From assembly GCA_002269645.1 (NCBI GenBank), contig NIVC01000688.1, forward strand, positions 1 to 64,000: a stretch of 64,000 nucleotides of DNA, given 5' to 3'. Numbering within the stretch: position 1 is the first letter of the stretch; each line of letters begins with the position of its first letter. This DNA is from Macrostomum lignano. Taxonomy: Eukaryota. A program made the position numbers and the translations under genes. Below the pieces are notes generated by a model, which had not been told where the DNA came from, did not search any database, and worked only from the letters and a program-made list of their open reading frames with translations. Shown here in pieces: positions 52,671-56,994 of the stretch.

Positions 52671-52802
52671 CCGGACCCCACCAACCGGGCAAGCGTCGGA
52701 GACTCACCAGCCGATCTCCAGACTCTCGCCCATGACGTCATCCGAGGTGACTTCGGCAAGGTGCAACGGCTGGCAACGCGCCAGCTGGTCACCAGCGCTG
52801 AT

Positions 52803-55800
52803 ACTTACTACTTACTTACTACTGACGGGGGGCGCAGGCGCCGCGAATAGGCCGCGAGGCCCCTATCGCAACCCCAAGGTAAAAGAGCACAAGGATTAGC
52901 CTTGGGGGTGCGCCCAGTCCCCGCCAGTAGTCGGCAGGTCCGCAGTGGAGGCATCGGCGACCCTCATCCGGCCGGAGTCCCGGACGAAGGCGCGGAGGTC
53001 TCGGATATTGTCCGCGGTGGTCAGCTCGTCCATCCGCTGGGGGTGGCCGAGGTATTTGTGCCGCGCCTTGTTGAAGTAAGGGCAGAAGGTGACGTGATGC
53101 TCCGCGGTCTCCTCTCCTATGCCACAGAAGGGACAGGTGGGAGGGCAACCGGTTTGCAACGATATATGTCTCTGGAAGAATCCGTGGCCGGTTAGGACCA
53201 TGCACATCTCCCTGAGGTCGGTTCTGTTAAGCGAAATCAGATAATCAGAGACTTTCCTGTTCAGGTTAGGCATGGCAGAGCGGCTCTGCCTGTACTCGGT
53301 GCAGCTGTTCCAGTGGAGCTGGTGCTGCTGATGGAGCCACCTGTTGATATGGCGGGTGACTTGCGACCTGGGGGTGGGTAGCCTCATCAGACGGTGGTTG
53401 CCGTCTGGGTTGCTGCCCTCCTTGGCGAGAGAGTCCGCGAGCTCGTTGCCCAGGATGTTGCTGTGACCAGGTGTCCAGATAATTCTAATCCTGTTAAGGA
53501 CTGAGAGAGATTGCACACTGCGGTGGCATTGAGATACTGTAGCAGCGGAGATATTCTCAGTGGTTAAGGCCTTAATAGCAGCTTGGCTATCAGTGTAGAA
53601 ATTAATGTCAAAATTATTAATGTTCGCCTGAAACAGTTGCTGGGCACACTGCTCAATGGCGCAAATTTCAGCTTGGAAAACTGAGGTGTTCTCACCGAGG
53701 TGCAGACTTTCCTGGAGAAGCATCTTACCCTCGTGGAAAATGGCAATACCCGCTCCAGCGCGGCCGTTGAACAGCGAGCCGTCGGTGAAGCAGTGAATGC
53801 CCTGGCTGCGCCGGTTCACACCGACATCCAGCGGAATGTTGTCTCGGCCAGGGATGGCGGTCTTGAAGCCCCTCCTGATGTTGAGGGCGGGAGGTCGACT
53901 ATCCACATTGCCCAGGTCCATGTGGATGTTGTTAAGGTCGCGGCGGACAAAGTCCATATGCGGGATTAATGTTTTCATTGGCATAAAGCCAGAGGGCGCG
54001 TTATTTAACGTTTTATCTCTGATAAGCCGGGAGGCAGACTTCATAGCCTCCGCCCTAATAAATAGGTGAAGCGGAGGTAGGTTAAGGATAGTGTTCAGCC
54101 CCTCGTAAGGGGTGGACGGGTACGCACCTGTGATGGCACGGCAAATGCTGCCCTGAAGCTGGTACAGCCGCTGACGGGCGGCCTTCTGCTCCAGCACGCT
54201 AGTCCAGATGAGACTCGCGTATGTGATACTGGGCCGGATGATGCCGGTATAAATCCAACGGACCGTTCTAGGCGAGAGGCCCCAAGTCGGCCCGATGGCT
54301 CTGCGCAGCTGGGCAAAGCAGCGTTTTGCCCGACCGATGACGTTATCAAGGTGCTTCGTCCAGCGCAGGTCATGCGTTAGCGTCACACCGAGGTATTTGA
54401 CCTCCTTCTTGAAGGGGATGTTTCTGCCATAGACAGTGAGGTTTTTCATCTCCCATTTACGGCGCTTGGTGAAAACGACAGCGACAGTCTTAGTGACGCT
54501 GATTTTTAGGCCATGCTGTGTAGCCCAGTCGGCCGCCTTGTCGGCGAATTGCTGCATCAGGTTGCGCAGAGTGGCGGGGTCGGGTCCGCTGACGACCGCG
54601 GCAACGTCATCGGCGTAGCCCGCCCTGGTGATACTGCTGGGAATGTCAGCGGTTAGAAGTTCGTCCATGACGAGATTCCAGAGAAGTGGAGTTAGCACGC
54701 CACCTTGCGGGCCGCCTTTCATCACCGCCCGGGTGAGGGTAACGCCCATAAGTGTGGATGTCACAAACCTTTTGCGGATCATAAAATAAATCCAGCGAAC
54801 AATGCTGTGTCTTACATTCCTGCGGGAAAGAGAATTTCTGAAGGAGCGGAAGAGGACATTGTCAAATGCTCCTTCGAAGTCAACGAACAACCCGCAAGCG
54901 AGTTGTTTGCTAAGGATGGCACTCTCAATTTTGGAGGTAATGGCGTGGAGAGCATGCTCAGTCGTCCTCCCAGGCTGGAAGGCGTACTGGTACTTACTGA
55001 CAGGGTCGGAGCGCAGGTCGCACTCTCGAAGCCTCCACAGGATGAGCCTCTCCATCAGCTTAACACAAAAGGAAGTGAGGCTGATGGGCCGGAAGGATTT
55101 CACGTTGGTGTAGTCACCCTTAGCAGGTTTCGGGATGAACACGACTCTGGACATTCTCCAGATTGTGGGAATGTAACCTGTGGTATAACAGTCAACAAGC
55201 AATTTAGAGAAAGAATCAGCAAAGTTTTGCAGCTTTAGCGCCTCCTGCAGGATACAGGGGGCGATATTGTCAGGGCCAGACGATTTATACGGTTTAAAAG
55301 AATTTGCTGCCAGCTGGAGTAGCTGGGGGGTGGCGCACTGCTGGAAAAGCTTGTGATCACAAGGCCTGTGGTCATCGACCACGTACTCCGGTTCGTCAAC
55401 CTGCGGAAAGCAGGTGGAGAAAAGAAGATTTAGCGAACCTTCGGCACTGGTAGTGTAGTTACCATCCAGGTGCAGAAGGGAGTTACACTGAGCTAGCGTG
55501 TCGTGCCTGAGAGTCCTGACCAGCCGGGCTGTGGGGTGTTGCCCTTCCAGGCCGGCGCAGTAGGCTTTCCAGGTGGTCTTCTTAGCCCTTCGGATAGCAC
55601 TTTTGTACATCCTCAGAGCAGAGTGGTAGTTCTCCCAATCCTCTGGGGTATTCGAGCCGTTTGCGAGGCGTTGCAGTCGGCGGGTGTTTTTCTTCATGCG
55701 AGTGAGCTCTTGACTCCACCAAGGAGAGTATTTCTTCCTGCAAAACAGCTTAGGGGCGTTAGCGCGTATGGCGGTGTTTAGGATCTCAACGAGGGAGTTG

Positions 55801-56058
55801 CACCGATGCTCAATGCCAGGGAGATCCTCGCTGGAGTCCGGTAAGTTGGCTTCGGTCAGGAGTTTTAGCAGGTCTCTTCGAAAACCTGTCCAGTCGGCCT
55901 TTTTCAAATTAAGGCGGTCCCGGTTCTCATGACGGGCTCCGACGGAGCTGATGCTGTACTGAATGTACGAGTGGTCGGAAAGCGATGGGAGGTCATCCCT
56001 AACCAGCCAGCTGTGGACCTGATTGAGGGCGTTGTTGGAGACGAGAGTGAGGTCGATA
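52803..56058 (-). mobile_element. 5'-truncated non-LTR retrotransposon with RT, RNase H and C-terminal CCHC knuckle (I group, Loa/Lian-like)
   Basis: 12-bp TSD ACCAGCGCTGAT at 52791-52802 and 56059-56070. Open ORF of about 1050 aa from the APE tail (IDLTL...SDH) through RT (FRPISL, QGGVL, YADD), RNase H ([23 protein letters not shown]) and CPFC...H...C. 3' tail of TAAG/TAG repeats. Confidence 0.96.
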
Positions 56059-56994
56059 ACCAGCGCTGATGCAGCTCGTCGAACCGTCCTCATGCTGGCG
56101 GCCGACGCTCCTGAGACTCCCGTGCACACTGAAAAGTGCATCTTGTACTTATTTGAGCTGGGCGCGAACCCCAAGGCGGCTGACGCGAACGGCGACACGG
56201 CTGCGCACCTGGCAGCCCGGCGGGACCACCTGCGGCTGCTGACGCTGCTGTCGTTCGATGCGAAGTGGCTGCGGAACGACAACGGCGCCACTCCGCTGAT
56301 GGAGGCGGCGCGGACTGGAAGCTGGAAATGCGCCAAGCACCTGCTGCACCTGCTCAGGCAGAAAAGGTTCAATGAGTGCGAGAAGCACGGAAACTCGAAG
56401 AGGTCGCGGCTGCTCGGACTGCAGGATCCCGAAGGTCGGACGGCGTCGGACCTGGCGAAGCTCAGCGGCCACTCAGAGCTGGCCAGCTACATCGAGCGGT
56501 GAGTGAGCAGTTCGCTGCTGTGTCCATAAAGTTTTGCAGCATTCGGCTGGGGTGGCCAGAGCTGCAGTCTCAGGCCAGCCAATCAGAGCCAGTCAGCTGA
56601 GCTTGTCTCTGTCTGACTGCTTGATGGACGAGAGCTGTGATTGGCTGGCTGCCTTCCAGCCAGATTGTATTAATTAGTTCATTTTTATTATCGGCGCCTT
56701 TTAACATGCAACTCTGTGCAGCTCTATATAACCCTAACCCTAACCACAGAAGCTTTTACCTTGAATATTTTATGCTTGACAAGTAAAAAGCATCTTTTTA
56801 TAGATTTCAATTTAACAGTCTGAATGGGCTGTATATTAATGGATATATTATAAATTAAATTGATAGATAGCAGCTTGACAGAGATTATATGGATAGATTG
56901 TAGTTTATTAAAAGGGATTTTGAAGAAGTTCACTCTCATGGAGTTCTGTTTCACAGAGAGGATTTCGATGGATTTGGCACCTTCAGTCAGTAGT

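What the first reader, a model, noticed from the sequence alone, without database searches (positions are those of the whole stretch)
52791..56070. Very recent LINE insertion knocks out an ankyrin gene mid-exon; the pre-insertion allele is fully reconstructable
Seen: an exact 12-bp TSD (ACCAGCGCTGAT) flanks a 3256-bp antisense element. Removing it gives the uninterrupted ...[19 protein letters not shown]..., and the remaining exons have no other lesions. As assembled, the host frame stops 16 codons into the element's tail. Inference: a fresh, probably polymorphic null allele, perhaps tolerated because another gene copy or haplotype exists.
Basis: seen in the sequence. Interest (0 to 1): 0.7.

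Follow-up and report, generated by a model that had tools for sequence, protein, structure and literature searches.

The report
Young LINE insertion breaks ankyrin gene
A recently inserted, 5'-truncated LINE retrotransposon sits antisense in the second coding exon of one member of a large ankyrin-repeat gene family of the flatworm Macrostomum lignano and truncates that copy; it is a clean but ordinary transposon-made null allele in a repeat-rich, recently polyploid genome.

Summary
An exact 12-bp duplication (ACCAGCGCTGAT; 52791-52802 and 56059-56070) flanks a 3256-bp element on the minus strand. The element is a non-LTR retrotransposon with RT, RNase H and a CCHC knuckle. It has a short TAAG/TAGTAAG repeat tail, is truncated inside its endonuclease domain, and has no LTRs or inverted repeats.

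Its 1053-codon frame is fully open and differs at 3 of 962 residues from a longer Macrostomum lignano copy, so it is young.

Joining the flanks gives an uninterrupted exon. That exon aligns gap-free (95%) with three paralogous empty sites on a public M. lignano contig and with 26 paralog protein clusters. Five exons with canonical GT-AG borders are intact in the window. As assembled, the protein stops after 63 native and 15 foreign residues, before any ankyrin repeat. No consensus splice donor precedes that stop.

Redundancy is plentiful: a large tandem family and three subgenomes 1.9-2.4% apart. However, no near-identical intact copy is on record, and polymorphism could not be tested.

Verdict: real, correctly read, biologically ordinary. 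The host family, hypervariable at the ankyrin binding surface and linked to caspase gene models, is the more interesting by-product.

The parts
52791..52802 (.). Left copy of the 12-bp target-site duplication, ACCAGCGCTGAT. It is also the last 12 nt of host exon 2a.
56059..56070 (.). Right copy of the 12-bp target-site duplication. Its first 2-3 bases (AC/ACC) also match the codon expected in the element at its 5' break, which is junction microhomology.
52803..56058 (-). 5'-truncated non-LTR retrotransposon (LINE), 3256 bp, antisense to the host gene.
52803..52821 (-). 3' tail of the element. It reads TAGTAAGTAAGTAGTAAGT on the minus strand: a simple repeat, not poly(A).
52899..56057 (-). Single open frame of 1053 codons, followed by a stop at 52896-52898. 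It contains no internal stop or frameshift.
55962..56057 (-). Remnant (about 32 residues) of the C-terminal end of the APE-type endonuclease domain. The rest of the domain is missing.
   Evidence: the element starts at residue 247 of P0001, whose Exo_endo_phos_2 match covers residues 162-278.
54378..55136 (-). Reverse transcriptase domain (residues 308-560 of the frame), with the YADD motif present.
53412..53798 (-). RNase H domain (residues 754-882).
53082..53135 (-). C-terminal CCHC-type knuckle, [18 protein letters not shown].
51050..51088 (+). Host exon 1 (MAQRGKPPFPDER), with donor GTAAGT.
   Evidence: homology to the transcript-based model P0153.
51157..52669 (+). 54-bp minisatellite (28 copies) that fills host intron 1. 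Each unit ends in TTGCAG.
52653..52802 (+). Host exon 2, part a (LQKLTQPDP...RQLVTSAD).
52848..52850 (+). Premature stop (TAG) in the host frame, 46-48 nt inside the element.
56071..56498 (+). Host exon 2, part b ([12 protein letters not shown]...ASYIE-R), containing ankyrin repeats, with donor GTGAGT.
57838..57892 (+). Host exon 3 (EMQLVVDADGWISGLTDQ).
57966..58447 (+). Host exon 4: the second ankyrin block, which is hypervariable among paralogs.
58901..58942 (+). Host exon 5 (YDGKIYFEESLAL-), with donor GTGAGT. In paralog model P0138 this segment leads into a caspase domain.
59124..64000 (+). 15-bp satellite (ACAGCTACAGCACAC, about 340 copies) that runs to the end of the window and hides whatever lies downstream of the gene.

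Best explanation
[quoted passage not shown] A non-LTR retrotransposon of an RNase H-bearing, APE-type family (I/LOA-like) inserted by target-primed reverse transcription into exon 2 of one member of a lineage-specific ankyrin-repeat gene family.

Inferred mechanism: the endonuclease, supplied in trans or by the source copy, nicked the plus strand after ...GCTGAT. The exposed 3' end primed cDNA synthesis from the element's TAAG-repeat RNA tail. Reverse transcription stopped, or the cDNA was joined through 2-3 nt of microhomology, inside the endonuclease-coding region. The staggered second nick produced the 12-bp duplication. The copy lacks most of its endonuclease domain and everything upstream, so it cannot move on its own.

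The event is young: there has been no decay of the duplication or of the 3.16-kb frame, and divergence from a sister copy is at most about 0.4%. That makes it younger than the 1.9-2.4% split between the three subgenomes of this neopolyploid. It is therefore expected to be confined to one subgenome or haplovariant.

For this gene copy the effect is a null allele. Translation ends after 63 native and 15 foreign residues, before the first ankyrin repeat, and the stop lies 3.6 kb upstream of the next exon junction, so the transcript should also be a target for nonsense-mediated decay.

Shown: the anatomy, the empty-site collinearity, the youth of the element and the truncated frame. Inferred: the order of the TPRT steps, loss of function at the RNA and protein level, restriction to one subgenome, and tolerance through redundancy.
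For: The exact 12-bp duplication occurs only twice in the window, and the element has no LTR or TIR.

Pfam gives RVT_1 at 1.6e-30 and RNase_H at 4e-13. The best solved relatives are human LINE-1 ORF2p and R2. The YADD, DGS...[11 protein letters not shown] and CCHC motifs are intact.

The organism and the family are identified by 94-100% identical M. lignano proteins. The longer copy P0001 carries Exo_endo_phos_2 at residues 162-278. The element starts at its residue 247, with 3 mismatches in 647 residues and 0 in 315.

The frame of 1053 codons is open. The probability of this falls to 0.09 at 2.4% divergence from substitutions alone, and below 0.02 at 1% if indels occur at an assumed 10% of the substitution rate.

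The joined flanks are in frame. The joined exon 2 aligns over positions 1-576 without a gap at 95.1% to L001 10252-10827. Three paralog units each carry the 12-mer once. Twenty-six M. lignano paralog clusters align across the junction with no indel.

All visible exons have GT-AG borders and give an open 398-residue product. Pfam ankyrin matches start at residue 71, after the break at residue 63. The first GTRAG on the host strand is at 53076, beyond the stop at 52848.

Subgenome divergence of 1.9-2.4% is reported in PMC10733133.
Against: No DNA of any other copy of this LINE family could be fetched, so the age rests on protein identity and frame intactness, not on nucleotide divergence. P0002, the 100% identical protein, might be a model of this same locus.

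No reads were available, so junction support, zygosity and polymorphism are untested.

The gene may continue past the window, so an older lesion downstream cannot be excluded.

dN/dS close to 1 in exon 2 among paralogs is also compatible with weak constraint on that part.

No expression data show that this copy was ever transcribed.
Confidence: 0.85

Rival explanations
1. The insertion is real and young, but it hit a paralog that was already dispensable or decaying. In a birth-and-death multigene family, nothing functional would then have been lost.
For: There are at least 26 paralog clusters and tandem arrays on other contigs. dN/dS is about 1 in exon 2. Both flanking satellites are greatly expanded here compared with the paralogs (28 versus about 7 and about 3 copies; about 340 versus about 30). 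No gene model for this locus is on record.
Against: The start codon, five exons and all splice sites are intact. At 5-17% divergence all compared paralog frames remain open, and exon 4 shows dN>dS rather than dN=dS. That pattern points to selection on the product, not to decay. The missing gene model is expected in any case, because the Mlig_3_7 annotation dropped transcripts that overlap repeats.
Confidence: 0.2
2. Assembly artefact: a LINE copy was wrongly joined into the ankyrin exon when repeats were collapsed or reads were chimeric.
For: The genome is hard to assemble. More than half of it is repeats, and 36% of Mlig_3_7 scaffold length was classed as chimeric between subgenomes.
Against: A misjoin does not create an exact 12-bp duplication of the target placed precisely at the ends of a complete 3' tail and a 5'-truncated body. 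Nor does it leave flanks that rejoin in frame and without a gap against three paralogs.
Confidence: 0.03
3. The insertion is fixed and its effect is bypassed. In that case the element would be spliced out, or would supply a new 3' end or promoter, so that a useful shortened or alternative product is made.
For: Two AATAAA motifs lie on the host strand inside the element (54057, 54785). Several donor-like and acceptor-like sites also lie inside it.
Against: No consensus donor lies between the start of exon 2 and the stop at 52848-52850. Skipping exon 2 shifts the frame, because exon 1 ends in phase 0 while exon 3 supplies the last base of a split codon. Any product would lack all the ankyrin repeats or its start.
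Confidence: 0.04

Closest known systems
I factor of Drosophila melanogaster, including its insertions into the white gene in I-R hybrid dysgenesis (from general knowledge, not tested here)
   Same: It is an APE-type LINE with RT followed by RNase H and a C-terminal CCHC knuckle. Its 3' end is a short tandem repeat rather than poly(A). It makes target-site duplications of roughly 10-14 bp, is often 5'-truncated, and new insertions make null alleles.
   Different: The host phylum is different. The tail unit here is TAAG/TAGTAAG, not TAA. Clade membership (I versus LOA versus others) was not resolved. Named relatives are only about 33% identical.
Lian (Aedes aegypti) and the LOA clade of non-LTR retrotransposons
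   Same: The domain order is the same: EN, RT, RNase H. One distant hit (33% identity, 98% coverage) is labelled 'Lian-aa1 retrotransposon protein' by its source.
   Different: That label comes from automatic annotation. No RT phylogeny was made, and identity is low.
Human LINE-1 exon insertions that cause disease, for example in F8 exon 14 (general knowledge)
   Same: The mechanism and the signature are the same: TPRT, 5' truncation, a target-site duplication and microhomology at the 5' junction, with a coding exon disrupted. The RT is recognisably related to L1 ORF2p (E=7e-14).
   Different: L1 has a poly(A) tail and no RNase H domain. Here the host gene is one of many paralogs in a polyploid, so a phenotype is unlikely.
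Platyhelminth ANK caspases (PMC11463336)
   Same: Host-family gene models P0138 and P0156 join this ankyrin block to a Peptidase_C14 caspase domain. The window's exon 5 matches the linker that precedes the caspase part of P0138.
   Different: No caspase exon is visible in the window, because the satellite runs to its end. The paper describes ANK caspases as unique to parasitic flatworms, and for M. lignano it reports only a kinase-prodomain caspase. The fusions seen here are gene models from a fragmented assembly and could be chimeric.

Membership tests
Non-LTR retrotransposon (LINE) | Reverse transcriptase of the non-LTR type | tested here: met
   RVT_1 at 1.6e-30. The best solved relatives are LINE-1 ORF2p and R2. 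The YADD motif is present.
Non-LTR retrotransposon (LINE) | Target-site duplication, with no terminal direct or inverted repeats | tested here: met
   There is an exact 12-bp duplication. No other terminal direct repeat and no inverted repeat was found.
Non-LTR retrotransposon (LINE) | Complete 3' end with a poly(A) or simple-repeat tail, and variable 5' truncation | tested here: met
   The tail is TAGTAAGTAAGTAGTAAGT, at 52803-52821. The body starts at residue 247 of the longer copy P0001.
RNase H-bearing APE-type LINEs (I/LOA-like group) | RNase H domain C-terminal to the RT | tested here: met
   RNase_H at 4e-13, residues 754-882.
RNase H-bearing APE-type LINEs (I/LOA-like group) | APE-type endonuclease N-terminal to the RT | tested here: met
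   This is met for the family: P0001 has Exo_endo_phos_2 at 5e-22, residues 162-278. This copy keeps only the last 32 or so residues of that domain.
RNase H-bearing APE-type LINEs (I/LOA-like group) | Placement in a named clade by RT phylogeny | tested here: inconclusive
   The only indication is a 33%-identical hit that its source labels Lian-aa1. No tree was made and no reference set was on hand.
RNase H-bearing APE-type LINEs (I/LOA-like group) | ORF1 (gag-like) and a 5' UTR promoter in full-length copies | not testable with these tools
   This copy is truncated, and no DNA of a full-length copy could be fetched.
Macrostomum lignano ankyrin-repeat family (host gene) | Ankyrin repeats, and collinearity with paralogs across the insertion site | tested here: met
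   Ank_2 at 1.7e-27 on the rejoined product. Identity is 93% over 100% of the joined exon to P0121. There is a gap-free 576-nt DNA alignment to L001.
Platyhelminth ANK caspase | Caspase (Peptidase_C14) domain downstream of the ankyrin pro-domain in the same gene | tested here: inconclusive
   The domain is present in paralog models P0138 and P0156. The window shows only the linker exon at 58901-58942, followed by satellite to the end of the window.
Segregating (polymorphic) transposon-insertion null allele | An empty allele of the same locus exists in the population or on the other haplotype | not testable with these tools
   No reads were available. The neighbouring window ORFs are not on record for a contig look-up. 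No protein more than 93% identical (exon 2) or more than 78% identical (exons 3-5) is on record.

The most novel reading that the evidence does not exclude
The insertion is younger than the split of the three M. lignano subgenomes, so it is present in only one of them. It would then be a caught-in-the-act case of gene fractionation by an active LINE family in an animal neopolyploid. In addition, the gene it removes belongs to a tandemly arrayed ankyrin family that is under diversifying selection on its binding surface. That family may be a pro-domain of caspases or kinases, that is, a candidate recognition or immune-type receptor repertoire in a free-living flatworm, where ANK caspases have been reported as absent.
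Probability: 0.35. Interest if true: 0.5.

Novelty: new member of a known kind. Interest (0 to 1): 0.25.

Why it matters
In itself this is a textbook LINE-made null allele and changes nothing conceptually. It has three practical uses.

(1) It shows that an RNase H-bearing LINE family of M. lignano has been active very recently. That matters for a laboratory model used for transgenesis and stem-cell work.

(2) The filled and empty states would make a simple marker for telling subgenomes or lines apart.

(3) It draws attention to the host family. This is a large, tandem, hypervariable set of ankyrin genes linked to caspase and kinase gene models, and it may deserve its own study.

Tried and rejected
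- **Locus look-ups:** I looked for the same locus or its homeolog through exact-protein look-ups of neighbouring window ORFs (PSF3-like 49050-49709 and PDZ-LIM 26280-27677). Neither is on record.
- **Intact twin of the gene:** I searched the protein collection for one. The best identity was 93% for the joined exon 2 and 78% for exons 3-5, and the best clusters hold only two members each, none identical.
- **Other LINE copies:** I searched the window and two fetched M. lignano loci for nucleotide dating. I found none.
- **RNA features:** Rfam scan of 48000-59200 found no match. The fold of the element's 96-nt 3' end had a z-score of -1.25, which is not distinctive.
- **LTR or DNA-transposon reading:** rejected, because there are no terminal repeats.
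- **Minisatellite as coding sequence:** rejected in favour of an intron. The transcript-based model P0153 splices exon 1 to the TTGCAG acceptor at the end of the array, and the window has the same exon 1 and donor. Several frames are open there only because the repeat unit lacks stops.
- **L001 unit 3 as allele or homeolog:** rejected, even though the upstream 2.9 kb is 96.5% identical. Identity drops to 85% in exon 4, and subgenomes differ by only about 2%.
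Full report
**1. The observation**

The 12-mer ACCAGCGCTGAT is present exactly twice in the window, at 52791-52802 and 56059-56070. Shuffling expects 0.01 matches, and no shuffle gave two. It is the only direct repeat that brackets the segment, and there are no inverted repeats. The bases outside the repeat differ on both sides, so it is exactly 12 bp. The enclosed segment, 52803-56058, is 3256 bp.

Joining 52802 to 56071 keeps the reading frame and gives ...GKVQRLATRQLVTSAD|[17 protein letters not shown].... As assembled, the host frame reads TYYLLTTDGGRRRRE and then TAG at 52848-52850.

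**2. The element**

On the minus strand a single frame of 1053 codons is open from the first base of the element to a stop at 52896-52898.
- Pfam finds RVT_1 (residues 308-560, 1.6e-30) and RNase_H (754-882, 4e-13).
- The YADD box, the RNase H acidic motifs and a C-terminal CPFC...H...C knuckle are present.
- The closest solved structures are human LINE-1 ORF2p and R2 proteins, matched over the RT.
- The 3' end on the minus strand is a 93-nt untranslated stretch that ends in TAGTAAGTAAGTAGTAAGT, with no poly(A). Its predicted fold is not distinctive (z = -1.25), and Rfam finds nothing.

The protein search identifies the organism and the family. Dozens of Macrostomum lignano proteins are 94-100% identical. 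More distant relatives (31-41%) have the architecture endonuclease, RT, RNase H, and one of them carries the source label 'Lian-aa1'.

The 1204-residue M. lignano protein P0001 has an Exo_endo_phos_2 endonuclease domain at residues 162-278. The window's element begins at P0001 residue 247. It differs from P0001 at 3 of 647 aligned residues in one segment and 0 of 315 in another. The copy therefore lacks at least 246 codons of its own frame, and whatever lies upstream of that, so it cannot transpose autonomously.

At the 5' junction the codon GTT (Val) is built from the GT of the duplicated target plus the first T of the element, and P0001 has Val at this position. The break therefore coincides with at least 2 nt of microhomology. 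From general knowledge, that is typical of 5'-truncated LINE insertions.

I file the element as an APE-type, RNase H-bearing (I/LOA-like) LINE. The exact clade was not resolved.

**3. Age**

The duplication is exact and the 3159-nt frame is intact.
- Substitutions alone would leave the frame open with probability 0.37 at 1% divergence, 0.09 at 2.4% and 0.007 at 5%.
- With indels at an assumed 10% of the substitution rate, the probability drops below 0.02 at 1%.
- Three amino-acid differences in 962 residues against an independent, longer copy translate to roughly 0.1-0.4% nucleotide divergence. This figure is my estimate.
- Published SNP divergence between the three subgenomes of M. lignano is 1.9-2.4% (PMC10733133).

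The insertion is therefore most likely younger than the subgenome split. This is an inference. No nucleotide sequence of another copy was available: none lies in the window or in the two fetched loci.

**4. The host gene**

The piece downstream of the insertion is made of ankyrin repeats. I first searched the two pieces separately; nothing suggested a toxin or effector, so I then joined them.

The joined exon finds 30 proteins. Twenty-six of them are M. lignano cluster representatives, 71-93% identical, and all are collinear across the junction.

A transcript-based model from the Mlig_3_7 assembly (P0153, found as a cluster member) defines the structure. A short exon 1 (MAWRGKPPFPDEK) is spliced to LQKLTQP.... 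The window holds the same exon 1 at 51050-51088 (MAQRGKPPFPDER, donor GTAAGT). A 1.56-kb intron follows, filled by a 54-bp minisatellite of 28 copies whose units end in TTGCAG. Exon 2 starts at 52653.

Mapping the paralog proteins back to the window gives the remaining exons:

| Exon | Coordinates |
|---|---|
| 1 | 51050-51088 |
| 2 | 52653-52802 plus 56071-56498 |
| 3 | 57838-57892 |
| 4 | 57966-58447 |
| 5 | 58901-58942 |

All have GT-AG borders and compatible phases.

The rejoined product is at least 398 residues long, is open throughout, and carries ankyrin matches from residue 71 to 371. A 15-bp satellite begins at 59124 and runs to the end of the window, so the 3' part of the gene cannot be seen.

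**5. Empty sites**

The contig that carries P0153 (NIVC01000414.1, locus L001) holds three tandem units of the family.
- The joined exon 2 (576 nt) aligns end to end without a gap at 95.1% to L001 10252-10827, and at 95.3% to 23208-23783.
- In all three units the two window flanks are contiguous and the 12-mer is present once, with one mismatch each (TCCAGCGCTGAT; ACCAGTGCTGAT twice).

This is direct comparative evidence that the 12-mer is the duplicated target and that nothing but the element was added. These units are paralogs, not the allele: identity is about 95% in exon 2 and 84-88% in exon 4.

**6. Consequence**

The break lies after residue 63 (13 from exon 1 and 50 from exon 2), before any ankyrin repeat. 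The stop lies 46 nt into the element.

On the host strand there is no GTRAG donor between the start of exon 2 and that stop; the first is at 53076. Skipping exon 2 would shift the frame. Splicing therefore cannot restore the product.

The stop lies 3.6 kb upstream of the next exon junction. Under the usual exon-junction rule (general knowledge, unverified in flatworms), that makes the transcript a target for nonsense-mediated decay. The knockout reading for this copy is therefore well founded, but it remains an inference from sequence.

**7. Redundancy and polymorphism**

Redundancy is abundant.
- There are at least 26 paralog clusters, and tandem arrays on two other contigs.
- The genome has three subgenomes. 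The reference assembly contains 180 Mb of non-repetitive blocks duplicated at 95% identity or more.

Nevertheless, no protein on record is closer than 93% (exon 2) or 78% (exons 3-5) to this copy. The best clusters contain no closer member.

This absence is weak evidence, because the Mlig_3_7 annotation excluded transcripts that overlap repeats. Look-ups through neighbouring ORFs failed. Whether an empty allele or homeolog exists, and whether the insertion segregates, could not be tested.

**8. By-product: the host family**

Among the window copy and the three L001 units, dN/dS is 0.6-1.4 in exon 2 but 1.5-2.7 in exon 4. dN exceeds dS at p<0.05 in five of six pairs; the pairs are not independent.

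In an alignment of seven family sequences the framework is nearly invariant. Variability peaks at the positions before the conserved G-x-T and at the end of the first helix of each repeat. From general knowledge, these are the positions that form the ankyrin binding surface.

Some family gene models continue into a caspase domain (P0138, P0156). The third L001 unit is modelled with a protein kinase domain. A recent survey describes ANK caspases as specific to flatworms and unique to parasitic ones, and reports a kinase-prodomain caspase in M. lignano (PMC11463336).

The family may therefore be a diversifying recognition module attached to caspase or kinase effectors. The fusions are gene models from fragmented assemblies and need cDNA confirmation.

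**9. Verdict**

The finding is real and was read correctly. It is a young, dead-on-arrival LINE copy that truncates one paralog of a large family in a genome full of repeats and duplicated genes. It is a clean example of a well-known process and not a surprise to a specialist.

Noticed in passing
window 57966-58447 (exon 4), compared with L001 11516-11995, 13923-14405 and 24750-25226: Paralogs of the host ankyrin family show dN/dS of 1.5-2.7 in this exon. Variability is concentrated at the ankyrin binding-surface positions and the framework is invariant. This suggests diversifying selection on a binder repertoire.
   Followed up: partly
window 58901-58942; proteins P0138 and P0156; L001 22739-25672: Gene models of the family continue into a caspase domain (P0138, P0156) or a protein kinase domain (third unit of L001). 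A 2024 survey (PMC11463336) states that ANK caspases are unique to parasitic flatworms. The models may be chimeric.
   Followed up: partly
window 51157-52669: A 54-bp minisatellite (28 copies, 96% matches) fills intron 1. Each unit ends in an acceptor-like TTGCAG. The same array has only about 7 and about 3 copies in the paralog units of L001. It is open in several frames, and older gene models read it as coding (WVPQLQLQEL...).
   Followed up: partly
window 59124-64000; L002 7008-7452 and 11320-11751: The 15-bp satellite ACAGCTACAGCACAC (about 340 copies, with strong strand skew) runs to the end of the window. A short version (about 30 copies) follows each paralog unit in L002, so it is part of the family's repeat unit and is greatly expanded here.
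   Followed up: partly
proteins P0003-P0062, matched to element residues 22-240, 728-770 and 979-1053, or 22-240, 542-647, 739-854 and 914-1053: Many UniProt gene models of M. lignano labelled as kinase, RRM, SET, MFS, lectin and so on contain the same few stitched segments of this LINE at 94-100% identity. This is either recurrent gene-predictor splicing inside LINE copies or an internally deleted high-copy derivative. In either case it contaminates the annotation.
   Followed up: no
window 48675-51536 versus L001 20357-23221; window 49050-49709: A 2.9-kb block upstream of the ankyrin gene, which includes a GINS PSF3-like ORF, is 96.5% identical to a block in L001. A second copy is 92.8% identical. 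The duplicated unit is therefore larger than the ankyrin gene.
   Followed up: no
window 26280-27677 (-), 11036-11701 (-), 14579-15421 (-): Other genes are present in the window: a PDZ-LIM protein in one 465-codon ORF, and two ORFs with weak potassium-channel (Ion_trans_2) matches.
   Followed up: no
window 1-48000: Mini- and microsatellites are unusually dense. Examples are (CTA)107 at 16077-16397, (TTAG)112 at 17578-18024, a 21-mer in 54 copies at 39047-40201, and a 23-mer in 36 copies at 30947-31781. This agrees with the reported 15% tandem-repeat content of this genome.
   Followed up: no
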